Notes: a model not told the origin generated them from the sequence alone. A stretch of 64,000 nt of DNA from Entomortierella parvispora E1425 (GCA_020891255.1 BQFW01000008.1:992001-1056000); one strand, 5' to 3'. Positions 2,782-63,513 are shown, counted from the stretch's first letter. Made by a program: numbers and translations.

Positions 2782-4837
2782 ATGAGCACCGTCTCTGTCC
2801 CTGCGTACCCCAACGCATGTATCGGTCCCTCGCTTGCGGCCTCCACAGTTTATCTGGCAGGAGTGCCTCCTTCAGTTGAAGGGCGACTGGAGTTCTATTC
2901 CATCGATCTCACCAATATCAACTCGCCCACGGCAACACTTATCAACTCCACCGAACCTGCTGGCTTGTTTTGGACCAGTGGGTCCCCCAAAGCCTGTTAC
3001 CCCTATCCCGGTAACCAGGCCAACCCCAACAACCCTATGCTAATGGTCCAGTTTGGAGCAAAGTCCCAGTTCACCAACTTGTACCCAGTCAGCAAGTTCA
3101 TGGATGACCCCACTGGCTTCACGGACTATATGTTTGTCTCGCCAAAGCTGTTCTCCATTTCGGGTGCCGTTGGTCCCTCAAACTGGTTCACGGCGCTGTT
3201 GGACCATCCCTCCAACCTCACAGGCTCCTCTTGGTCTGCACTCCGCATCAATGCCACCCTGACTCTTGACAGTCAGAGAGAGTAAGTCAGTGGGGAGGCG
3301 AGGGTAGGCGCGTGCTACCTCTCTCTTTGCGATGCGGCGTGTTGTGTTGTTATTTTTTTTTATTCTTTAAAACGAGCTCTCAACTGTTGTTGACTTTGTC
3401 AGTACCAGGCAACTGAATCCTTTGTTTTCTCCTCCATTGTTTGCAGCTTCGTGATCTCACAGTACCCTACGGCCACACCTCTTCTCAGCGTTGGAACTTT
3501 TATTCCTACTTCGTCCACGCCTGCCCAGGGATACCAAGTGGTCTTTGATAACGGTGGAGGAGGCGTGATGTATACCTCCTTGGATTCTGCCGCACCCATC
3601 AACAATGACCAGAATGACAGGATTCTTTCTCTATCGAGTGCTCAAACCGTGGACATGGGCGGTATCATACTCACGTATAACGCCATCCCTGTCACCATGG
3701 TTGGTGTCGCGTACATCCTAGATCAGGTACAATTCACACCGCTGAAGTCCCACCCAAAGCGGACTTTATTCTCCTTTTCTTGGTACCGGAGACTTTTTTT
3801 CTTCCCTCCCAGGAGTGCTCACAAACCAACCTTTCTGGTCCTTTTTTCCTCGGAATGTTTAGGCTGCAGATGGATCCACAGTGATTTACAGCATCAACCC
3901 TGCCTCAGGACCCAAGCTTCAACGCGTCCCGGTCTCTGGAATGGTTCCTCCTTTCTCACCTTCCATGTCAGCAACGGCTTTGGGTGGCCAGATTGTCACT
4001 TATGGCAGTTCCTCCACCGGCTCTGTTTCCTCCACCTTCAACAGCTTTAACACAGTGGCTGGTTCTTGGAGCGGTCCAGGATTGGTGCAGCCCGCGGCCA
4101 TTCCCTCCCCCTCTGCTTCCAACAACATCAGTCCCACGCCTAGCAACAACAGCAACAACAGTAGCAGTGGCAAGAGTACGAATGTTGGAGCAATCGCTGG
4201 AGGTGTCGTCGGCGGGTTGGTTGTGATTGCTCTGATCGTCTTTTTGTTCATTCGTCATCGCCGTCGATCCAATGCCGCCGCTGCCAGTGCCGCTGCCAGT
4301 GCCACTGCCGCTCCTGCCCCTGTTCTGAACACTGCTACCAAGCCCATTTTCCAGGCCCAGCCCCCTCTCCAGCAACAACAACAACAACAGCAGCAGCCGC
4401 AGATGCAGCAAGCGTATGCATACGTGACCCCTCAACAGGCTCCAACCTACAACCCTCATAACTCTTACATGCCCTATATGGACCCTAGCAAGGATGCTTA
4501 CTCGCCTGCTCCACAGCACTCCGCGCCTCCTGCCCAGCCCCCTAGTCCCCTCATCTTCCAGCAACAGCAGCATCAACAACCAACATACTCGTACACTCCC
4601 CCTACCCTGGGCATTGCCGCCGTGGAGCCTCAGAATCCAAACATCTTCCAACCCCAAGAGGCATCTTCGGACAGTGGCAGTAACCCCTCGTACACTCAAG
4701 CTCAATACACTCCTTCCACAAGCGCGGCTACGCCTCAGACACCTTATACCCCCGTGGCCAACCAAGCTCATACCCCATCCACAGGCGCCTCTAGTCCTCA
4801 ATATGTTCACCACAACAATCACGGATATGTTTCGTAA
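2782..4837 (+). CDS. Single-pass membrane protein: beta-rich N-terminal domain, Ser/Thr stalk, TM helix, Gln/Pro/Tyr-rich tail; introns 3282-3446 and 3727-3862
   Basis: Three ORF segments join in frame at GT-AG sites; TM AIAGGVVGGLVVIALIVFLFI followed by RHRRR stop-transfer; N-terminal motif shared with gene at 51942-54796. Confidence 0.75.
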
Positions 4838-51941: not shown

Positions 51942-54796
51942 CTACAGTTTATTCTTTTTGTCCCGAGGAATGGGCCGTGGTAGAGATCCCAGCTTAGGTG
52001 TTAAAGGGCTTTGGGCCACAGGTGCTGGCGAGCCGCTGTTCGAATTTGCCTCAGAAGCGTTCTCAGTGATCCCAGCCTGCGCTTGTTGTTGGTGGATTTG
52101 TTCTTGTCGTTCCTGCCAAAGCATTTGTTGCTGCAGTTTTTGACTTTGGAGCTGCTTCTGTTGTTTTTGCTGTTGGTCCAGTCTATATTGGTCGTATATT
52201 TGCTGCTGTTGTCGCTGCTGCTGTTGTTGAATGGGTAGACTGGACACCGACGTCGGCACAGTGGGAGCGGGTCGACGATTTTTGGACTGAGGAGGCATCG
52301 GGAATTCCCCAAGAACACTGTCAGACTCTGAGGGTACAGGTGACGATGAATAGCCTTTGGAGGGTATAGGTGCAGTTGACGCGACTTGGCGAGAGGCAAA
52401 CAGTGGAGCTGATGCGGATGTCGGCGTGTTTTGTCTCTGTGTCTGTGGCTTTTTCTGTGGCCGCTGTTGTTGTTGCTGTTGTTGTTGCTGCTGCTGTCGT
52501 CGCGAGGCAAGTTGTTGATCTCCGTATTCGACCTTGTATGAGCCAGAGTCTCGATGACTCGCAGCGTGTCCTTGAGGAGAAGACGTGAAGGATGAAGAGA
52601 GGAGGGGTTCTATCTTGGATAGGCCAGCGCCACCGTTGTTGATACTGGTAGAAACACTGTTGTTTGAACTTCTTGGCTTCCTGGACTTTGCACCGCTGCC
52701 ACTGATCAGATCTGTAGATGCCAGTGGAGACGAAGGATTGTCTCTAAACGTCTGTCTTGGTGACTTTGGGGGCCTTGAAGAGTTGGAGCTGCGCTGTGAT
52801 TCAAGGCTCAGAGTCCTGTCGCCTTGACCTTGCTCTGATCTGACCCCATCCATGGAGGGAAGTCGATTGATGGGTTGTCTATCGTCGTAATTATCAGGAA
52901 TATTGACCTTGTAGTTGGACGACCCTTTCCTGCTGATTGGTTGTGAAAAGGACGAGGGGGAGGTATTTCGAAGAGGCGAAGGATGTTGTTCCTGTCGCTG
53001 ATTTGCAGACCCGGTGTATTCAGAAGGCAACGCCGGAGTCGGGGGCAGCATCGGCGGTGAGCTCACCAGGTAGATCTGAGAGCTAGCAGGGAACAATGAG
53101 ATGTGGCCAGAACTCAAGCTGGATCGTACAGAGTGCGAGCTCGACTGTCGAGATGGCCTTCCAGGACGTGTCCCTGCTGGTTGTGGGTTCGGTGGCGGCG
53201 GGTGGTACGGCTGCTGATGGCGCTGCTGTGAGGCTTCTTGTGCACGTTCTTGTTGTCCATGAGCGCTCAATGGTGTTCCAGGGGTGGACGGTTGAGCTTC
53301 AGTGAGGGCCAGCGTGGAACTGCTATCTGATGCTGGATTCCGTTTCTGATCAAGGTAAGCCAAATGCATCTGATTTCCTGGAGTCCTCTGGGTCTTGACA
53401 TCGTATGCCTCGTCTTTGAGCATCTCTACTCCTTTTGTCCTATTAGACGTCCTGCGTCGTCTCCTCCACGCAAGTGCCCCCACAATCAGAAAAAGAACAG
53501 CGACACCGGCAGCAATACCTCCAATCATGGCAAAATTCGGTTTCTTTGAGTCACTATCGCCATTCGCACCGCTGCCAAAGGATGTGGGGTTTACCAGTGC
53601 TGGTCCTGTCCAGGTCCCCGCAATCACATCAAAGATACTGATACCATTGGACGGACTCGAGCTTTTTGGGTCTAATCCACCGTAGACAATAATCTTACTA
53701 TTGAGAATGGTGACAGCTTGCTGAGCCAGGAACTGGGGAACCAAGCCTCGGGCAAGGGACTGGACCAGTTTGTACGAAGAAATGCGTGGGTCGATAGAAT
53801 AGAGCGCGATTGTTCCAACAGAACTCTGTATAATTGAGGAGAGCTGTTTGTCAGGAAACAAGGAAGCAATGGAAAACAACGCCCAAACTCGGTTGCACAA
53901 AAGAAAGGCCTCTGCCTCATTTTTGAAAAAAAGCTCTAATCGTACCTTGTCCACAACAAAAGCTGAAAAGGAGGATGTGAGGGGCCAGGCGTTCGTCGTG
54001 AGGATGTTGCCATTCATATCGACCGGCTTGACCAGAGTGATATTAACCAAAGGCTCCGTGGCCGTCAGGTTCACGGCTGGATGCTTATTACCCACGGTCC
54101 GAAAGACGGAACCTGTCGTGCCATTTTTCTCAAAAGAAAACAGAAGTCCGTTACCAAAGCTCGCAGTGTCTTGTGCGATGGCTCCCACAGTCAGAAGGGG
54201 ATCTGAGCCCACTGTCGAATCTCTAAACAGCACAACATTTTTTTTTGTGAAGAAAGATGTCGATGAGTAATTGAACAAATATTTCACATAGCATCAGTCC
54301 ACATTCCTTACATCGGTGCTCCAGACTCGCTACTGTTACCAATCCGTATGCTCCTCCAAGAGTCCGTGCCTCCTGGTTGTGGGACCGATTGTGCTAAGAA
54401 CCAGTTCCAGCCTGCTGTGGAGCCGACTAGACTAAACGTCCTTGGGCTGACATAATTCAGAGGGGATTCTGTGGCTGCACTTAAGGTGGTGAGCCAAGTG
54501 CCGTTGGGGTAGAACAGAGCCTGGATGGTATTCCCGAATTGTACAATGCTGATGGGGCTGTTTGATGGAGGTGAGTCGCCCAGGTAAGCACTGCAGGCGA
54601 GACTTTGCTGGGAGTCCCAAGCTGGCGTTGTGGAGGTTGAGGAGGAGATGAGCGTTGATGCGGGTGATAGAGGATTGGAAAGGTCGATAGAGTAAGCATC
54701 AAGACGTCCTGGAGAGGAAACACCAAAGAGAAATACTCTCTGATTATTGATGTCTGGAGCTAGACATGAGGAGGGAAGTGAAGGGAGTGTGGACAT
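51942..54796 (-). CDS. Single-pass membrane protein, paralog of the 2782-4837 gene, with long Ser/Pro/Gln-rich tail; at least one intron starting at 54311
   Basis: N-terminal SCLAP..VFLFGV..GRLDAYSIDLSNPLSP; kelch-like KIIVYGG...FDVIAGTWTGP; TM IGGIAAGVAVLFLIVGALAW followed by RRRRR. Confidence 0.72.
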
Positions 54797-55528
54797 GGAT
54801 GAGAATGCTGCAGGTAGTCTTGCCTCTCCCGTTGTATTGTATGAGAACTGGCGAGATGGCGAGAGCTTGGGAAGTAGAAGAGAAAGAGAGGAGAGGAGAA
54901 ACGGGCGGGATGTTGAGGAAGAAAGAACGGAAGAGACGGGCTGAATGAAAGAAATGAAAGAATAAAAAAAGAGGCTGCAGATTTTCATCTTTGTCTTCTG
55001 CGTTTCGCGCCCTGTGGACGGTTGCACAAACCACAACGGAAAAGATGTGGTTGCAACCAGCAGCCAGTTACGGTTGCTCTTACTCGATACAGTGGACAAA
55101 GCCATCTTTGGCTTATACAAATGACAGAAATGGTGCTGGGATCAGCAGTACTTCTTAAACCGGCTAGGCCTTATGGTGGCGATCTTGGCTCTACCGTGGA
55201 CTATGATTCACCATTTGTCTCTGAAGTCTGCAGGCGTGCCAGATCATGAAAAAACACGACTGGCGTTTGTGCTCTTTCCAAACAGAAGAGCAGTTGGCTG
55301 GGCTCTTTCGAACTACACTCCCATCACTGAGAAAGGCTTTTATTATTGTCTATTTCTGCGCTCGAATTCTTCGCGAGTCATCATGGGCTTTGAAGCCTGA
55401 GGTGGGAAGAAAGGTGGAGGGTTCATAGGGAGGCCTACATAGAAATAATCAAATGAACTGTTAGCAATCGCTTTTCAAACTGAATAATCCGATCACCATC
55501 TCATTGCCCTCATGAACCATGCAATGGC

Positions 55529-58500
55529 TTATGGCTTACCAGGATGTGGCATGCCATTCATGGGATGCCCAAAGTTGTTAGGGACAAAGTGGTTGGGACC
55601 AGGGCCAGGACCCATTCCAGGCATGGGGCGGGGAGGCACAGGGCCACCGGGGCCACGGTGCATCAGCATCTCGACGGGATTCATGGGATACATGTTGGGA
55701 TGCATAGGGTGGCCTCCATAGGGTGGCATGCCAACGAACTGCGAGGGGTGTGGAGGCATGAACTCGCCAGGCCCGCTCACATGCATCTGCTGATTGAAGG
55801 GTGGCATCTGCTGCGAAAACTGGGGTGGAAGTCCTTGGCCAGGTCGTTGCATAGGCATTCCATTAAAAAACCCTGATTCCGCCTCCATGGCAAGAGCATG
55901 GGATCCCATTGGTGAAGGCCCTCCATTGGGATAAATACCACCCATCCTAGGATCCATAATAGGCGAGTGAACGTTTGGTCCAGAGCCTTGGCCAAATGGT
56001 CCAAAGTTCTTGTTTCCTTGCTGCTGCTGCTGCTGCTGCTGCTGTTGTTGTTGCATAAGACGGTTCATCGACTGATGCTGCTGCTGCTGCTGTGGAGGCA
56101 TCGATTGTGAAGGATATTGCTGTGGAGGAGGCATCGACTGTACGGCATTGATAGCCTGAGCATTCATCTGTCGGGGACTGTTCACGGTTGGAGAAGCAAG
56201 TGATGGACTCGAGCTGCCAGTACCATTGCTGGAACCATTCACAGAGCTCAGTGGTCGAATCAATGGCGAGCCTGATTTTTGCCCATCGGTCTTTCCGCTC
56301 AATTGACGATAGACCGAAGTAGGGATGCCGCCACCAAATGCCACTTGCACGGGCCGAGGAGCTGGTCGAGTAGGTTCTGAAGAAGGCGTCGTGGATGCTG
56401 TAGTGGAAGGTGCTTCAGAGTTGGAGGCCGCGGATCCTCCAGTTGCAGAAGATGAGACCAAGTTCTCAACAGGAGAAGGACTTTCGAGGCCGGCTTTTGT
56501 AGTAGTCTCCATGTTGACCGGTTTCACCTGAGTTGCAATAGCGGATGGGTCAACAGTTAGTGCCGAAGTCTCCTGACGTTTTGCAGGTAAACCTGCTGCA
56601 ATTCCGTCGCCAGTTGGGAGCTGCATCTGCGAACGAACAGCGGTGGGGCTGCTTGGGCCGGCTGAATCCGCTTGGTTAACAGATGGGGACTAATGAAGAG
56701 CAAAGTTGTTAGATATCTGCAATCTGATGCCGTGGATTCCAACAATGACAGAGGTTGGTTCTGTTTTACCTTGGACAGAACGGCCATGATTTTGCTGAAA
56801 GCAAATGCATCTTCTGACTGTTCCTTAGTCATGGTGGGAGGTCCAGAAGGAGTTGGTTTGGATGCATTCATGGATTGAAGAATCTCTGCCTCAGAAGGCA
56901 TACGAGTAAGTTGAGGCGGTGGATGCATAGCTGCGGTCGATTTGGGTGCGTGAGACTGGAAGAGTTGATCAAGGGAGAGCTGCTTTCCTGGAATGGTATC
57001 TGCATTAGGTCGAGAAGGCCCTGCTGCCACTGTAGGTTCGGATTCGGTGTCGTCTTCCTCAAAAAAGCGCGCAAAGCGAGAACCGTCGGCTTTTCTTGTT
57101 GGCGTTGGCAGACGCTGATCGTCAAATGTGGACGCAGCACTGTGTTGAGAGAGGAACTTTTCGAAGGCTGTCGAGGATTCAAGTGTTTTGCTGAGATCGA
57201 TACCTCCGGGGCTGAAGAACAGGTCGATATCCTGAATGGGATCATTCGACAAATGAGTCTTGCCAAGTGGTTTCTCCAGCGCGGCAAGTATGGCAGTATC
57301 GGCTCTGCTATTGACTGCTGTTGAGGTTGTCTGTGGTACAGCAGCACTCGAGCGCCAAGATGTGCTGCTGTCGGCCCTGGATGGTGCCTTTGGATCCGTC
57401 TTGCTTGACTGAGACATCGTTTCCTTTTCCTTCTCACGCCGCTCCTGCTCTTTCATGCGAGCTTTCCAAGCTTGAATATCATCCACAAATGCCTGGGGTT
57501 CGCCCTCGCCATCTTTCGCCGATGCGCTCTCTGTTTCTGGATTATAACTCATCCATTCTGGCGCATCAGACCGCTGCTGCGAGCGCATGGACATGCTACT
57601 TCCATTGTTACCATTACTGCCCGAGGAATTGTTGTATGTCGACATGGACTGGCCAGAATTTCTGGTAGAAGTGCCCAATCTCGATCCTAACCCTGATCCT
57701 GAACTTCCGGATACAGACCCAGTGGAAGACAGTGTAGATCTCGAGTCTATAGCGCAGAAATTCAAAGGTCAGTCAACGTCATCCACCATTATTCCAAGGT
57801 ACAGGTCTACATCACTAGTCCTACGACACTTACTTGAAAGAGTAGAACGGGAAGGATCTACTCGGCGTCTATCCATGCCGCTGAGCAGACCTGTAATATC
57901 TTTAGGAGTGACTTTTGGAAGGGGTTTATGAGACGAGAGCCTCTCAATAGTCTCCCTTCCAAACCCTTGCTCCAGAGCGCTCGGAGGCCCGCGAGGTGCA
58001 CGACCTTCCCTCGGACTCTGCTGTTGAAAAAAGATATATGAACGACATGTAAATAAGCATGCCTCAAAGGTGATATTAGTGCATAGGTTCCTGTGAGCAG
58101 TTCGTTACCTCCAATGACTTTTTAAAACCAGAAAGGCCATCGTCTGATCGCTTCAGGCCTCCTAATGAAGACGAAGCAAAGCTCATTTTGGGAGGTCCAA
58201 GTACGATACGGTCTATTGAAGGTAGGAGAGAAGGTGTTAACGCCCAGCTGCCTACTGTATATCCACCACGCTGTAGTCAACGACCGATCAGCAGTGTATT
58301 TGTACCTGACAGGGTGGATCTATTGCTGAAAGGATCAAGGGTAAAACCAAGGTTAGCTGAAAGCTTCAACAAACAGAGATGGGCATTGATGATCACAGGC
58401 AGGCTAGCTCACTGTACCTTGTCGCGGAGCGAGAGCCGTTGCTCGCTTCTGGTTCTTCCTTGACAACCTCACTATCATGTAAGAGTGAAGAGGTTAAGCT

Positions 58501-58733
58501 CGATTAGCTTACGTTGCACCGCTGCAAAAACAGGCAGAAAAGGGGACCCAAGGAAAGATATGCTCCTTGCTTGTCAACACTTACCCAAACCAAACGTGAG
58601 TCGGGGGCAAGGCAGCAGGTCGTTCCACAAGAGGGCTTTTAGCACAGGCCATTAGGAACTCGCGTGAGTATCGAATTACAGAGTCGGCATCCTGTGTCCC
58701 TGACAATGCAGGGTCGGAGGGAGTCGAGCTCAT
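55529..58733 (-). CDS. 4E-T/Eap1-like eIF4E-binding protein, seven exons (58585-58733, 58418-58471, 58306-58325, 58109-58212, 57834-58020, 56770-57746, 55529-56689), about 883 aa
   Basis: Exons sum to 2652 nt in frame; YSREFLM (YxxxxL-phi) at 58650-58670; DRIVLGPPKMSFASS; APEWM at about 57550; SRFARFF at 57061-57081; Q/P/M/G-rich disordered C-terminus. Confidence 0.75.
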
Positions 58734-59162
58734 GGCGAAAGATGGAATCTGAGGATCTAACGAAGAGATGCGATCGAGCGATGTGTAATGTGTGTGTGTT
58801 GAAAGAGATTGAGCAGTGGTTTGACGCACAGCAGGCGAAAGGAAAATGGGCGGTGGAAGAGAGGGGCAGTGTTTGATGATGTGATTCGAGTGGTTGACAG
58901 GAAGGCGAGAGAGATGCAGGCAAGGCACAACGGCAGGCGAGGGAAGGCAAGGATGGCAGGGCAGGACAGGGCAGTGCAGGTCAAGGAGAGTCAAAGGTGG
59001 AAAGCAACGAGAGATGCAGGCGTCTGTGTGGTGTGTGTGTCTGTCTCTGTGTGGGTTGTGTGTTGGAAGAGCGAAAGGCCATTGTCCGCTGTCAGTGGTT
59101 CGTCTGTTCGCCTGTTCTGTTCGTCTCCTCGTCTGCCCTCGACTCTTTTTTGGGCGAGGTCG

Positions 59163-59184
59163 TGACGTCATAGATCACGTGATC
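59163..59184. promoter_or_regulatory. CRE palindrome TGACGTCA plus extended E-box GATCACGTGATC in the divergent promoter
   Basis: Direct reading at 59163-59170 and 59173-59184, roughly mid-way between ATGs at 58733 and 59567. Confidence 0.65.
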
Positions 59185-59566
59185 ATCTCATTCTGCCTCT
59201 TTTTTTTTTTTTTTTTTTCTTCTGCATGTGCCACGATTTGGGATCAATCAATCTGTTCTTTCCCTTGTTCTCTGATTCACCGTGTCCGTCCGTTCCTTCC
59301 CTCCCATCCTTCTCCCTGTCCATCCTCCCATACGCTCCATCGTTCCCCTTCCATCTTAGTCTACGAAGCACGCCCTGTCTCTCCTTCCTCTCACATTTGC
59401 ATTTTCTTTCTATCATTTGCTCGCATTTCTTCACTGTATACTATTCCAAATCGTTTCTCTCTCTATCTTTTTATCATTCTCCAACACCTGTTCCTCCTCC
59501 TCGTCTCAACCTTCTAAACAACTTCCCTTCGTTCTCTTTTACACTTGTTTTTGATTTCTTTCAACC

Positions 59567-60651
59567 ATGGCTCAAAACGATAACCTCACCGTACCTGCTG
59601 GAGACAGCAAGTATGTCACCGTCTTTAACGACCCCGTCAACTTCAACGCAAAGCATCCCCTTCACAACTCTTGGACCCTCTGGTTCGATAACCCCGGTAA
59701 GAAGTCAAACGCTAACAACTGGGAGCAGTCGCTTAAAGAGCTTATCACCTTTGACACGGTCGAAGACTTTTGGGGGTAAGTTACCGCACTGTTTTCAACT
59801 CGTTCGCGAAATACTTCCCTTGTTTCTTCCTGTTTGTCGCCAACCGCGTTTTCCCTTGACCTACTCCTTCAACAGAGGAGAAGCGGTGAAAGGCTGCGCC
59901 TGGAGACAAAAAAAAGTGCAGAGGACTGCAGATCGATCGAAATATCTCAATTTGGCCTATTGTGCTCTGATCTAACTGTCTTGTTTACTCTCTGATAGTG
60001 TTTACAACAATATCATGAAGACTTGTGATCTGGCCATCAGCTCCAACTACCACTTGTTCAAGCAGGGAATCAAGCCAATGTGGGAGGATCCCGCCAACAA
60101 GAACGGTGGAAAGTGGAGCATTCAGTTGCCCCGCAACAAGACCATGGCCGATATTGATAACATCTGGCTTTTTACCGTACGTATACACCCCGAAACAATC
60201 GCGACTTTCAGGACAGTCAGCAAAACAGAGAAAAAAAAAGCGGTTGCGGATCGAATCTGAAACCTCCTAGAAGAGAGAGACCTTGCTGGACCATGGCTGA
60301 CGTGGACACTTATTTTCTTCTTTTCTAGATGCTTGCCTGTATTGGCGAGGCTTTCGAGTACGAGAATGAGGTTTGCGGAGTGGTGGTGTCTGTCCGTAAA
60401 GCCTTTTTCAGGATATCCATGTGGACCAGGTCGTCAGACAACCAGACCATTGCTATGAGCCTTGGGTAAGGACGCGAAAGCTTTGTCTTTGAGAGAATTG
60501 CTCCCTCATCGTTCGAGTAGATACTAACCGCTGCACATTTTCTTTTCTCAATAGCAAAACTCTCAAGAAGTCTGCAGGAATCGAGGGTGTTCTCGAATTC
60601 CAGAGCCACAACGAGGACGCAAAGCGCCAGGGCAAACCTTGGACTGTGTAA
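59567..60651 (+). CDS. eIF4E: Translation initiation factor eIF4E (class I); introns 59776-59998, 60177-60328, 60466-60554
   Basis: [23 protein letters not shown]|[34 protein letters not shown]...RISMWT. Confidence 0.97.
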
Positions 60652-60754: not shown

Positions 60755-61982
60755 CTAAAGCTCCAGACCTGGAGCATCATCGTCGTCCGAGAACGAAGCC
60801 ACGGAGCTCATATCATCATCTGACGAGCTTTCATCCGTGGCAGCATCTGCAGCATCCTTGGTGGCATATCGAGAGACGTATTCTGGTTCCAATCAGGACA
60901 TAAATGGCAGGAGTGTTAGTTGGCAGCTCTTCACATCTCAAGTCGTTGAATCTGAGAGCCGTGCAATTGTAGTCCAGACACAGGCAGCGTTGCACTGTAC
61001 CTTTTACTTTGAGTTCATAGCTGGCTGCCTCTCGCATCAGCATAGCAGCCGCTTCCCCGTTCAAAGGGTCCGTGGGATTGGGATAGCGAAGGAGCTGAGG
61101 CAGGAAGACTTCAAAAATGTTGATCATATCTAGAAAGGAGGAAACAGATCGGAAATGAGAGGTGTTAGCTGAGGCCAGACCTCTTCCTCGCCCTGTAGTC
61201 GTCAATCCAGTGATTCTGGGTATCCTTACCAAACATTGGACTCCACGTCTGGTTGATCACGTCCAAGCACACTGATCCACTCCTGAATATTGGAAAGCAA
61301 AAAGAAAAACATAAACACAAACAAACAAAGAGTCAGTGTTTTCGTCTTGTGCCTCCTTTTTCACTGAATGCATTGTGCGGCCCTTTCTCCCCCCAAAACC
61401 CCTTCAGCCCCCTTCCCCTTCCCACCACCAGATATTGCAAATGACATGGAGAAAGGCGAAAAGGTGCCAAGGGTTGCCCCATTCCTTACAGTTCGTCAAT
61501 ATTGGGGTGGAAGATCCTATTCATGAATCCAATCGAAGGCGATTTGTAGGGATATTGGTCAGGGAGCTCCACATGCACTTTCCAGACGCCTCCAGCGAAC
61601 GGCGCTATTTTTTTTTTTTTGGTTATCCACAAGAACAGTAGGTGAGTGTTGGTGCATCATTGAATCCATTTAAGCCTGGGTTCCTCTTCAAAGTGTGGTG
61701 GTGCATAATCATCGTGATAGAGCGAACTCCTTCTCTTTCTCATGCCTTACTGTCTGTGGGTCCATGGAAGCGGACATAAAACTCTTGCATGTTGTCATTG
61801 ACAAGAGTGACCTCATAGTCACTCATCAAGCTAGAGGAATACATTGAGAAGGCAGAAGGACGTTAATTAGAAATGATTAAGCAGAAGGGCATACAGAGGG
61901 TCAGCAACCATCTCAACATGGTGTAGAACTGCGCTTACAGTTTCATGACATCGGTCTCGATGCGTCTGCGGGGCGAAGACAT
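60755..61982 (-). CDS. UBC8: E2 ubiquitin-conjugating enzyme (Ubc8/UBE2H), six exons
   Basis: [85 protein letters not shown], acidic tail. Confidence 0.96.
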
Positions 61983-62389
61983 TGTTCTATTCTTGGTGTG
62001 GTTGCTGCTTGTCTTTACTTCGATGAGCGAGTTTCTTTTGTTGCACTCTGTATAGTCGGTGTGTTGTCGGTGGTGGCTGCTTGAGGCTTGGCTGGAAAGA
62101 TGAACGGTGGAAGAATGATTGAAAAAGGAAAGGAAGGAAGAGAGAGGGAGGATAAAGGATTTGACCCACGGGGCACGAGACGCGAATCTGAACTTTTGTG
62201 CCCAATCCAATCAGCACTGCTCTATATTTTCAGTGTGGTCACAGTTGGATTGCGTTGCTCTTGGGCACCCTTTTTTCTTCTCGTTGTATGCGGATACAAA
62301 AAATAATAATGCGAGATCAAGATCAAACCATTCAAAGAGTCAGCTTATTCTTTTTAATTGACAACTATAGACAGCGAATCATCCTAACT

Positions 62390-63513
62390 TTAGTTGTTGG
62401 CAGCACGACGACGATCGCGCTCCTCGGCAATGGTCAAAGCGACACCCTTGCCCTTGGGGAGGGAGATCCAGGGCTTGTTGCCCTCACCAATGACGAAAAC
62501 GTTGGAGAGACGGGTGGCGAACTGGCGGTCGAGGACATCCTTGATGTGGACGATGTCGAAACCTCCGACGTGACGCTCACGGTGGGTGATGACACCGACA
62601 CGGCCAGTGTTACGACCTCCGGTGACCATGGCAACGTTACCGACCTCGAACTTGACGAACTCGTTGAACTTGCCAGTCTCCAAGTCGAGCTTGACGGTGT
62701 CGTTGACCTTGATCAAGGGATCGGGGTAACGAAGGGTGCGGCCATCGTGGGTGACAACGAAGGGGATGCCCTTGGCACCGAGCTGAACCTTCTTGACCTT
62801 GCACAACTTGTACTTGGCCTCCTCGGCAGTGATACGGTGGACGGTGAAGCGACCCTTGGTATCGTAGACGAGACGGAAGTTCTCACCGGTCTTCTCAATG
62901 GAGATAGCATCCATGAATCCAGCGGGGAAGGTGGAATCAGTGCGGACCTTGCCATCAACCTTGACGAGACGCTGCATAAGGATGGACTGAACCTCCTTAC
63001 CGTTGAGTGCGTACTTCAGACGGTTGCGCATCAAGATGACCAAAGGCAAGCACTCACGGAGCTTGTGAGGACCAGCAGTGGGGCGGGGGGCCTACATAGA
63101 TCAAAAGAACGACGTTGAACTGGTTGAGTATATGAAGCTGAAGATGTACAGGACACTGGAAAGGTATTTTCATAAAAGTAAGGTTCTTTGGTGTCGTCGT
63201 TGATAGCATCGAGGTTGTAAAGATCATCATCCTGTTCTGATATTGCTGAGTGGCATAAAAAAAACACCAACAAGGAAGTCGTGGAGCCAACGATAGCGAA
63301 GGTCGTGCAATCATCAATAGTTTCCAGGGCTCTGTATAGATGTCCAGTTGGAGGTCCATATCCAATCTCATTGTTGTATCCGTGTTCGTTCAGTGTAAGT
63401 TTCCAGACAAATAAGTAGGGCAGTCAAAAACATACATAGGTGCCGGTAAGCTTGTCAAGCATCCAGTGCTTGGGGGCGTTAAGACGCTTCAAGTGCTTCT
63501 TGGGTCCACGAGC
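62390..63513 (-). CDS. RPS4: 40S ribosomal protein S4 (eS4); exons 63436-63513 and 62390-63091; ATG exon not found (probably beyond window end)
   Basis: [26 protein letters not shown]|[17 protein letters not shown]...[15 protein letters not shown]...[12 protein letters not shown]...[10 protein letters not shown]. Confidence 0.98.

What the first reader, a model, noticed from the sequence alone, without database searches (positions are those of the whole stretch)
55529..60651. eIF4E is encoded head-to-head with a putative eIF4E-binding repressor (4E-T/Eap1-like)
Seen: the divergent partner of eIF4E (ATGs 833 bp apart) splices into an 883-aa protein starting with YSREFLM, a canonical YxxxxL-phi motif, followed by a PEW motif and SRFARFF. 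Established: YxxxxL-phi peptides dock on the eIF4E dorsal face (VEDFW, intact here); from memory, metazoan 4E-T carries a PEW-containing DDX6-binding region and a similar SRFxxxF stretch. Inference: a cap-binding factor and its own inhibitor/P-body adaptor are co-transcribed from one bidirectional promoter, fixing their ratio. I know of no such arrangement described in fungi, but cannot search to confirm.
Basis: partly seen in the sequence, partly recalled or inferred. Interest (0 to 1): 0.8.

Follow-up and report, generated by a model that had tools for sequence, protein, structure and literature searches.

The report
eIF4E beside an Eap1-family binding protein
A Mortierella-type fungus encodes the cap-binding factor eIF4E back-to-back with a long disordered protein of the fungal Eap1 family, which very probably binds eIF4E, but related fungi show the pairing is recent and dispensable rather than a fixed regulatory unit.

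Summary
A canonical class I eIF4E gene (+ strand, 4 exons, 206 aa) lies head-to-head, 833 bp away, with a spliced gene for a disordered protein carrying YSREFLM, PEW and SRFARFF.

The partner belongs to Pfam PF20566 (Eap1, eIF4E-associated protein). That family is found across fungi. A profile of the N-terminal module hits only 4E-BP1 peptides in the whole PDB (E 3.6e-5). Pfam EIF4E-T (PF10477) is never hit, so "Eap1-like" is supported and "4E-T" stays a resemblance.

The adjacency is intact in four Mortierellaceae lineages:
- the window species
- M. alpina
- Mortierella sp. AD032
- Lobosporangium

It fails elsewhere:
- Lunasporangiospora keeps the position, but its eIF4E is a decayed pseudogene while the partner is intact.
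- Podila has rearranged the block.
- Actinomortierella has an RBM39-like gene upstream, as does a glomeromycete.
- Calcarisporiella and Bifiguratus lack the pairing.

Ratio-fixing by a shared promoter is therefore untested and not required. The scan had not noted this before on other DNA.

The parts
59567..59775 (+). eIF4E exon 1 (residues 1-70; HPL, W-x-x-W, VEDFW dorsal-surface motif)
   Evidence: Pfam IF4E 39 bits; best PDB match Chaetomium eIF4E 6FBZ, E 2e-14
59999..60176 (+). eIF4E exon 2 (cap-binding PMWED Trp-Glu, GGKW)
   Evidence: 72 bits; 6FBZ, E 7e-19
60329..60465 (+). eIF4E exon 3
   Evidence: 47 bits
60555..60651 (+). eIF4E exon 4 and stop codon
   Evidence: conserved in orthologous loci
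58734..59566 (.). 833-bp divergent intergenic spacer. It is purine-rich on the + strand in its left part and pyrimidine-rich in its right part, so each gene has a CT-rich leader on its own coding strand.
59163..59170 (.). TGACGTCA (CRE-like palindrome) at the point where strand composition switches, 404 nt upstream of the eIF4E ATG. It is followed by CACGTG (59176-59181) and a T21 tract (59200-59220).
   Evidence: a (T/C)(G/A)ACGTCA element lies 404-485 nt upstream of eIF4E in all four loci with an intact pair; it is absent upstream of the partner in Podila and Actinomortierella.
58585..58733 (-). Partner exon 1: N-terminal eIF4E-binding module, with canonical YSREFLM (58650-58670), the SPLVERP elbow and the invariant Trp of VWFG
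   Evidence: only 4E-BP1 chains hit, E 3.6e-5; Pfam eIF_4EBP 16.8 bits, below cut-off
58413..58471 (-). Partner exon 2
   Evidence: GT-AG boundaries in frame; aligns with orthologues
58306..58356 (-). Partner exon 3 (least certain). Its 3' end, RSTLS-D, aligns with SKSSMSD of the orthologues.
58109..58212 (-). Partner exon 4 with the invariant IVLGPPKMSFASS motif
   Evidence: (weak Eap1 hit at profile positions 69-89)
57834..58020 (-). Partner exon 5
56770..57746 (-). Partner exon 6: PEW (57553-57561), the DDIQAWKARMKE helix, SRADSSxSWR, SRFARFF (57061-57081), LSLDQLF, RMPSEAEIL and EDAFAFSKIM
   Evidence: AF2 helices fall only at these motifs
55540..56689 (-). Partner exon 7: the FGGGIPTSVYRQLSGK motif, a polyQ run and a long Pro/Met/Gly/Gln-rich low-complexity tail
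55343..55434 (-).

Best explanation
The - strand gene encodes a roughly 922-aa intrinsically disordered scaffold of the fungal Eap1 family (Pfam PF20566). Its N-terminal module has three parts: a canonical helix (YSREFLM), an S-P elbow of the 4E-BP1 type, and an invariant Trp about 26 residues downstream. This module most likely clamps the dorsal and lateral faces of eIF4E and competes with eIF4G. Downstream short motifs (IVLGPPKxSFA, PEWM, the WKARMKE helix, SRFARFF, PTSVYRQL) most likely recruit mRNA-repression and decay factors. The invariant PEW is a candidate Dhh1/DDX6 W-pocket ligand. The + strand gene is the ordinary class I eIF4E. Their head-to-head position arose inside the Mortierellaceae and travels as part of a five-gene synteny block: Kelch-like, Eap1-like, eIF4E, E2 enzyme, RPS4. 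It is not needed for either gene to function. Shown here: the gene structures, family membership, motif conservation and synteny pattern. Inferred: binding to eIF4E, PEW-Dhh1 binding, and the lack of selective value in the adjacency.
For: Family: orthologues pass the PF20566 cut-off of 28 bits (P0005 54.7, P0003 33.4, P0010 30.0). Sixteen of 22 diverse members hit it, best E 1e-67. Profile hits in the large database are all fungal and almost all carry PF20566. eIF4E binding: the N-terminal profile A2 finds seven PDB sequences, all 4E-BP1 or designed 4E-BP peptides bound to eIF4E, best E 3.6e-5. Y22, S33, P39 and W48 are invariant from Mortierella to Basidiobolus and Pezizomycotina. In yeast Eap1p, a conserved Trp in the FWRL motif downstream of the canonical helix contacts the eIF4E lateral surface (PMC6061780). 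Disordered scaffold: AF2 mean pLDDT is 41, with helices only at conserved motifs, including residues 30-37 (the canonical helix) and 264-289. PEW is invariant in 20 of 20 aligned members. PEW is the W-pocket ligand of 4E-T and GIGYF on DDX6 (PMC6771390), and yeast Eap1 co-purifies with Dhh1 (PMC6459490, PMC3468468). eIF4E: Pfam IF4E; the closest solved structure is the Chaetomium eIF4E that was crystallised with eIF4G. Adjacency derived and dispensable: the pair is intact in L001, L006 and L007. In L011 the eIF4E is a pseudogene while the partner's binding module is intact. L010 is rearranged. Actinomortierella has an RBM39-like upstream neighbour, and a Racocetra gene model fuses RBM39 to the Eap1-like gene. 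L003 and L005 lack the pairing. The gene tree places Actinomortierella as sister to the other Mortierellaceae.
Against: The window protein could not be scanned as one spliced sequence. Its separate exons score below the PF20566 cut-off (best 12.6 bits), as does its 60%-identical orthologue P0002 (21.1 bits). No binding experiment exists for any non-yeast member. A conserved ACGTCA element sits centrally between the two genes in all four intact pairs, so shared regulation is not excluded. Basidiobolus has an IF4E gene about 10 kb from its Eap1-like gene, which could hint at older linkage. The tree rests on one disordered protein and a quick search.
Confidence: 0.62

Rival explanations
1. One reading: the two genes form a co-regulated module. 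One bidirectional promoter drives both, so the cap-binding factor and its inhibitor are made in a fixed ratio, and selection keeps them together.
For: The two ATGs are only 833-1109 bp apart, head-to-head, in four genera. A (T/C)(G/A)ACGTCA element lies at the centre of every intact pair, 404-485 nt from the eIF4E ATG. The strand composition is mirror-symmetric about this element.
Against: Three of seven sampled Mortierellaceae lineages lack a working pair. In Lunasporangiospora the partner stays intact while the adjacent eIF4E has decayed at 32% of otherwise invariant exon positions. The flanking genes are about as syntenic as the pair itself. The ACGTCA element is absent upstream of the partner in Podila and Actinomortierella, so it may belong to eIF4E alone. 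No 8-mer is shared by all four spacers. No expression data were available.
Confidence: 0.2
2. The partner, and the whole PF20566 family, is the fungal orthologue of metazoan 4E-T/Cup. It would carry the same ordered set of short motifs: the eIF4E-binding motif, then a PEW-containing DDX6-binding region, then an SRFxxxF motif. It would act as a P-body adaptor.
For: PEW is the defining W-pocket element of the 4E-T CHD (W221) and of GIGYF (PMC6771390). Here PEW lies about 220 residues after the eIF4E-binding motif and is invariant. Human 4E-T has its eIF4E-binding motif near the N-terminus, its CHD at 208-245 and a conserved motif III of unknown partner at 331-346 (PMC5291280). That order and spacing are similar to 22 / 246 / 406 here. 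The protein has a similar length and a similar disordered, Q/P-rich architecture.
Against: PF10477 is not hit by the window's exons, by 7 orthologues or by 22 family members, even at E up to 10. PEW-region profiles of 73 and 23 columns find no 4E-T or GIGYF chain in the PDB. No IEL or FDF element was recognised after PEW. A published statement says Eap1p and 4E-T are not homologues (PMC3468468). I could not obtain a 4E-T sequence through the tools, so no direct profile-profile test was possible.
Confidence: 0.3
3. The YxxxxL-phi motif is a chance match and the partner has nothing to do with eIF4E, so the adjacency is pure coincidence between unrelated genes.
For: The bare motif occurs in roughly 15% of yeast proteins (PMC7139794). 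The window's exon 1 is below the cut-off for Pfam eIF_4EBP (16.8 vs 24 bits).
Against: The match extends over about 30 residues, including the S-P elbow, and is specific to 4E-BP1 among 177,635 PDB sequences. The module is invariant across fungal phyla. The family is the one that Pfam names after the experimentally verified eIF4E binder Eap1.
Confidence: 0.04

Closest known systems
Eap1 (eIF4E-associated protein 1) of Saccharomyces cerevisiae; Pfam PF20566
   Same: Orthologues of the window protein score above the PF20566 gathering threshold. Both have a canonical YxxxxL-phi helix followed by a conserved Trp-containing non-canonical element. Both are long, disordered and non-enzymatic. Yeast Eap1 associates with Dhh1 and promotes decapping and repression of specific mRNAs.
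   Different: The window protein is about 290 residues longer than the 632-aa size I recall for yeast Eap1p. It has a long Pro/Met/Gln-rich tail. Its binding helix and elbow look more like 4E-BP1 than the crystallised Eap1p peptide does; that peptide was not retrieved by the profile. Reviews state that Eap1 is restricted to Saccharomycotina (PMC7139794), yet this family is found in Mortierellomycotina, Mucoromycotina, Glomeromycotina, Basidiobolus and Pezizomycotina. I did not inspect a Saccharomycotina sequence, so which motifs yeast Eap1p retains is unknown here.
Metazoan 4E-BP1 (Pfam PF05456)
   Same: The eIF4E-binding region aligns residue by residue: (I)(R/I)Y-x-R-x-F-L-(L/M)-x-C-x-x-S-P-(V/L)-x-x-x-P-x-x-L-P. 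This includes the Ser-Pro that is phospho-site S65 in 4E-BP1.
   Different: 4E-BPs are proteins of about 120 aa with nothing beyond the binding region. This protein has 922 aa and many further motifs, and the Pfam score is below the cut-off (16.8 vs 24 bits).
4E-T / Cup / IFET-1 (Pfam PF10477)
   Same: It works like this family on paper: an N-terminal eIF4E-binding motif, a PEW motif about 200 residues later, further conserved short motifs, a disordered scaffold of about 900-1000 aa, and an expected link to the DDX6/Dhh1 helicase.
   Different: There is no detectable HMM similarity, no recognisable IEL element of the CHD, and no UNR-binding motif I. Nuclear shuttling signals were not examined. 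Membership was tested and not met.
Divergent (bidirectional-promoter) gene pairs encoding functionally linked proteins, such as histone H2A-H2B pairs
   Same: Head-to-head orientation, a spacer under 1.1 kb, and products expected to interact physically.
   Different: The classic pairs are conserved over very long distances and their co-expression has been shown. This pair is confined to part of one fungal family, has been lost repeatedly, and has no expression data.

Membership tests
Pfam PF20566 Eap1 (eIF4E-associated protein) | HMM score at or above the gathering cut-off (28 bits) | tested here: inconclusive
   The window protein is spliced and could only be scanned exon by exon (best 12.6 bits). 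Orthologues and relatives pass: P0003 33.4, P0005 54.7 and P0010 30.0 bits. Sixteen of 22 family members hit, best E 1e-67. The closest full-length orthologue, P0002, scores 21.1 bits.
Pfam PF20566 Eap1 (eIF4E-associated protein) | Canonical YxxxxL-phi eIF4E-binding helix | tested here: met
   YSREFLM at residues 22-28. Y is invariant in the family. An AF2 helix falls at the equivalent residues of P0002.
Pfam PF20566 Eap1 (eIF4E-associated protein) | Conserved Trp-containing non-canonical element downstream of the helix (FWRL in Eap1p, PMC6061780) | tested here: met
   W48 in VWFG is invariant in all aligned members. Its equivalence to Eap1p W145 is inferred, not aligned.
Pfam PF20566 Eap1 (eIF4E-associated protein) | Physical binding to eIF4E and association with Dhh1 | not testable with these tools
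   Needs a pull-down, ITC or a multimer prediction.
Pfam PF10477 EIF4E-T (4E-T/Cup) | HMM match to PF10477 | tested here: not met
   No hit for the window's exons at E up to 1, for 7 orthologues at E up to 0.1, or for 22 family members at E up to 10.
Pfam PF10477 EIF4E-T (4E-T/Cup) | Cup homology domain: PEW plus an IEL/FDF-type element binding DDX6 RecA2 | tested here: inconclusive
   PEW is present and invariant. No IEL or FDF was recognised. Profiles of the region find no 4E-T or GIGYF chain in the PDB.
Pfam PF05456 eIF_4EBP | HMM score at or above the cut-off (24 bits), and a small protein of about 120 aa | tested here: not met
   16.8 bits on exon 1, and the protein is about 922 aa. Only the binding region is alike.
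Pfam PF01652 IF4E, class I eIF4E | IF4E domain, with Trp at the positions of human W43 and W56 and the cap-stacking Trp residues | tested here: met
   IF4E hits on three exons. NSWTLWF, NNWEQ and PMWED can be read directly. The best PDB match is the Chaetomium eIF4E of the eIF4E-eIF4G complex.
Conserved co-regulated bidirectional gene pair | Head-to-head orientation with a spacer under about 1 kb | tested here: met
   833 bp in the window; 1066-1109 bp in L001, L006 and L007.
Conserved co-regulated bidirectional gene pair | Adjacency kept across relatives more than the surrounding synteny | tested here: not met
   Intact in 4 of 7 Mortierellaceae lineages. It is a pseudogene in L011, rearranged in L010 and absent in L008/L002. 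Outside the family it is absent in L003 and L005, and in L004 an IF4E gene lies about 10 kb away, not head-to-head. The neighbours RPS4, UQ_con and Kelch are similarly syntenic.
Conserved co-regulated bidirectional gene pair | Correlated expression from a shared promoter | not testable with these tools
   No transcript data were available.

The most novel reading that the evidence does not exclude
The PF20566 proteins are the long-missed fungal counterparts of metazoan 4E-T. They would share the same ordered motifs (eIF4E-binding module, PEW Dhh1/DDX6 ligand, SRFxxxF motif) that budding-yeast Eap1 has blurred. In core Mortierellaceae, this repressor and its target eIF4E would be driven from one CRE-containing bidirectional promoter that couples their dosage.
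Probability: 0.12. Interest if true: 0.7.

Novelty: new member of a known kind. Interest (0 to 1): 0.33.

Why it matters
All Mortierellomycota copies of this gene are annotated as hypothetical proteins. Reviews still describe Eap1 as confined to budding yeasts. Placing the gene in PF20566, with a 4E-BP1-like binding module and an invariant PEW motif, gives early-diverging fungi a concrete candidate for eIF4E-dependent mRNA repression. It also offers sequences that could link yeast Eap1 with animal 4E-T. The head-to-head pairing with eIF4E is a neat natural arrangement that could be used as a reporter system. However, the comparative data argue that it is a lineage-specific accident of gene order and not a conserved dosage device.

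Tried and rejected
- Full-length scans of the spliced window proteins were not possible because no reference exists for a spliced product. I used exon pieces and orthologue ids instead.
- Pfam EIF4E-T was never hit.
- PEW-region profiles of 73 and 23 columns found nothing relevant in the PDB.
- The profile search of the 5.8-billion-protein set with alignment A5 returned only fungal PF20566 proteins. Its word prefilter probably never considered animal 4E-T, so this does not speak against homology.
- The look-up of the Rhizophagus orthologue's locus failed. The RBM39 adjacency in Glomeromycotina therefore rests on the fused Racocetra gene model alone.
- No 8-mer or longer is shared by all four intergenic spacers. 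Only the short ACGTCA core is shared.
- I tested whether the Lunasporangiospora pseudogene decayed by RIP-like mutation. All four transition types are about equally frequent, so I rejected this.
- My first two splice models (915 and 909 aa) were rejected because they put non-coding-looking sequence between exons 2 and 4.
- Literature searches for a described eIF4E/4E-BP divergent pair, or for a stated Eap1/4E-T homology, found none. One paper states the two are not homologues.
- The bacterial promoter/terminator scanner was not used because it does not apply to a fungal promoter.


Full report
**Anatomy**

The + strand gene runs 59567-60651 and has four GT-AG exons: 59567-59775, 59999-60176, 60329-60465 and 60555-60651. 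It encodes 206 aa. Three exons hit Pfam IF4E at 39, 72 and 47 bits.

The closest solved structure for exons 1 and 2 is the Chaetomium thermophilum eIF4E that was crystallised with eIF4G (6FBZ/6FC0; E 2e-14 and 7e-19). The Trp residues at the positions of human W43, W56 and W102, and the dorsal VEDFW, can be read directly. This is an ordinary class I eIF4E.

It is strongly conserved among genera. Exon 1 is 94-96% identical at the protein level in M. alpina and Mortierella sp. AD032. Exon DNA is 75-87% identical.

The - strand gene starts at 58733, which leaves an 833-bp spacer. My first splice models were wrong in the region 58100-58420. The final model has these exons:
- 58733-58585
- 58471-58413
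- 58356-58306
- 58212-58109
- 58020-57834
- 57746-56770
- 56689-55540
- 55434-55343

It gives 922 aa with a C-terminus conserved in the orthologues. Exon 3 remains the least certain.

**What the partner is**

A phmmer search of exon 6 against 1.84 billion representative proteins gave only 22 hits. Follow-up searches showed orthologues in every sampled Mortierellaceae genus, all annotated as hypothetical. More distant relatives occur in these groups:
- Calcarisporiella, Endogone, Umbelopsis and Parasitella
- Glomeromycotina
- Basidiobolus
- Pezizomycotina

Pfam PF20566 (Eap1, eIF4E-associated protein) is matched above its 28-bit cut-off by P0005 (54.7), P0003 (33.4) and P0010 (30.0). It is matched by 16 of 22 diverse members, best E 1e-67. 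The window's own exons and its closest full-length orthologue fall just below the cut-off, so membership is by orthology, not by a direct score.

Alignments show a fixed series of short motifs, invariant from Mortierella to Pezizomycotina:
- IRYxxExLLxxxxSPLVxxPxxLPxxxxW(F/M)G
- (I/L)VLGPPKxxFAS
- PEWM
- xWKxRMK
- SRFAxFF

Members outside the Ascomycota also share:
- SRADSSxSWR
- RMxSExExL
- EDxxGFxxIMxAL
- FGGxxPTSVYRQLSGK

AlphaFold2 on P0002 with the family alignment gives mean pLDDT 41. Helices appear only at these motifs, including the canonical helix (residues 30-37) and a confident helix at 264-289. The protein is a disordered scaffold studded with short linear motifs.

**Does it bind eIF4E?**

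The bare YxxxxL-phi motif is too common to count as evidence; it occurs in about 15% of yeast proteins (PMC7139794). But a 50-column profile of the N-terminal module, searched against all 177,635 distinct PDB sequences, returned seven hits. All of them are 4E-BP1 or designed 4E-BP peptides co-crystallised with eIF4E. The best E is 3.6e-5, and the alignment runs through the helix and the Ser-Pro elbow.

An invariant Trp lies about 26 residues after the Tyr. In yeast Eap1p, a conserved Trp (in the FWRL motif) downstream of the helix packs on the lateral surface of eIF4E (PMC6061780). I infer a bipartite dorsal-plus-lateral binding mode. This is an inference, not a test.

**PEW and the 4E-T comparison**

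PEW is indeed the W-pocket ligand by which 4E-T (W221) and GIGYF bind DDX6/Me31B (PMC6771390). Yeast Eap1 co-purifies with Dhh1 (PMC6459490, PMC3468468).

Human 4E-T has its CHD at 208-245 and a conserved motif III of unknown partner at 331-346 (PMC5291280). That order and spacing resemble 22 / 246 / 406 here.

However, profiles of the PEW region do not retrieve 4E-T or GIGYF chains. No IEL or FDF element is evident. I could not obtain a 4E-T sequence through the tools for a profile-profile test. The SRFxxWF reading of motif III is from memory only. The protein therefore plausibly works like 4E-T, but it is not shown to be a member of that family.

**Is the adjacency meaningful?**

I fetched ten orthologous loci. 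The results, by lineage:

| Lineage (locus) | Arrangement |
|---|---|
| Mortierella sp. AD032 (L001) | Intact head-to-head pair |
| M. alpina (L006) | Intact head-to-head pair |
| Lobosporangium transversale (L007) | Intact pair with the same flanking genes as the window (RPS4, E2 enzyme, Kelch-like) |
| Lunasporangiospora selenospora (L011) | Position kept, no eIF4E gene called; remnant is a pseudogene |
| Podila verticillata (L010) | Order is Eap1-like, Kelch, RPS4, E2 |
| Actinomortierella ambigua, two assemblies (L008, L002) | L008: upstream neighbour is an RBM39-like RRM gene in tandem. L002: contig ends 994 bp upstream, no eIF4E found |
| Calcarisporiella (L003), Bifiguratus (L005) | No IF4E neighbour |
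| Basidiobolus (L004) | IF4E about 10 kb downstream, not head-to-head |

In Lunasporangiospora, tblastn shows an eIF4E remnant with several in-frame stops, a frameshift and loss of the cap-binding Trp. It has changes at 128 of 406 exon positions that are invariant in the four intact orthologues. Its partner gene is intact, including IRYSREFLLECAKSPLVERP.

In Podila the divergent promoter has been broken. The contig ends before any eIF4E.

A Racocetra (Glomeromycotina) gene model fuses an RBM39-like N-terminus to the Eap1-like protein. This suggests that the RBM39 arrangement is the older one.

A quick single-gene tree places Actinomortierella as sister to the other Mortierellaceae (SH-aLRT 99). 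It rests on one disordered protein.

The simplest history has three steps. The eIF4E adjacency arose after Actinomortierella split off. It was then carried along as part of a syntenic block. It was later undone twice.

**The spacer**

No word of 8 bases or more is shared by the four intact spacers. All four do carry a (T/C)(G/A)ACGTCA element 404-485 nt upstream of the eIF4E ATG. It sits where the strand composition flips from purine-rich to pyrimidine-rich. In the window this is TGACGTCA at 59163-59170, followed by CACGTG and a T21 run.

The element is missing upstream of the partner in Podila and Actinomortierella. It may therefore be an eIF4E promoter element and not a shared one. Co-regulation is neither shown nor excluded.

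**Verdict**

The partner is a new, unannotated member of a known family (Eap1, PF20566) with an unusually 4E-BP1-like binding module. The 4E-T label is not supported as membership. The dosage-coupling idea is untested, and the natural losses of the pairing argue against it.

One is an antizyme gene just beyond the window (s1-180523), which fits the Podila synteny. The other is a second candidate 4E-BP elsewhere in this genome (s1-185361).

Noticed in passing
L011:5588-6500 (- strand), Lunasporangiospora selenospora: An eIF4E pseudogene sits at the syntenic head-to-head position. It has several in-frame stops, a frameshift in exon 2, PMWED changed to LMRED, and 32% of otherwise invariant exon positions changed. 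All four transition types are about equally frequent, so the decay is not RIP-like. A functional eIF4E must lie elsewhere in that genome.
   Followed up: partly
window 59163-59220; L001, L006, L007 spacers: A CRE-like (T/C)(G/A)ACGTCA element is conserved in position, 404-485 nt upstream of the eIF4E ATG. In the window it is followed by an E-box (CACGTG, 59176-59181) and a T21 tract. It is absent upstream of the Eap1-like gene where eIF4E is not adjacent.
   Followed up: partly
P0058 (Racocetra fulgida) and L008:2334-4546: An RBM39-like RRM gene lies directly upstream, in tandem, of the Eap1-like gene in Actinomortierella. It is fused to the Eap1-like gene in a Racocetra gene model (residues 1-382 RBM39-like, 383-1061 Eap1-like). 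This is probably the older neighbourhood, and the fused model is probably an annotation error.
   Followed up: partly
L004:23215-23404 (Basidiobolus meristosporus contig): An IF4E-domain gene lies about 10 kb downstream of the Basidiobolus Eap1-like gene, with five unrelated genes between them. This could be chance or a trace of loose linkage; it is unresolved.
   Followed up: no
literature: A 2020 review (PMC7139794) states that Eap1 exists only in Saccharomycotina. PF20566 matches proteins of Pezizomycotina, Glomeromycotina, Mucoromycotina, Mortierellomycotina and Basidiobolus, nearly all annotated as hypothetical or 'sequence orphan'.
   Followed up: partly
window 60755-62000 (-) and 62390-63400 (-): Downstream of eIF4E lie a ubiquitin-conjugating enzyme gene (UQ_con) and ribosomal protein S4e. 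The same order is seen in Lobosporangium. In the M. alpina locus (L006) no E2 gene is called between RPS4 and eIF4E, which lie only about 430 nt apart.
   Followed up: partly
window 52863-54793 (-) and 2794-4099 (+): A Kelch-like gene lies downstream of the Eap1-like gene and is syntenic with M. alpina, Podila and Actinomortierella. It has a diverged paralogue (30-37% identity) near the start of the window.
   Followed up: no
window 56020-56100: A CAG/CAA repeat encodes runs of 12 and 5 glutamines inside the Pro/Met/Gly-rich tail of the Eap1-like protein. The tail length varies widely between orthologues.
   Followed up: no
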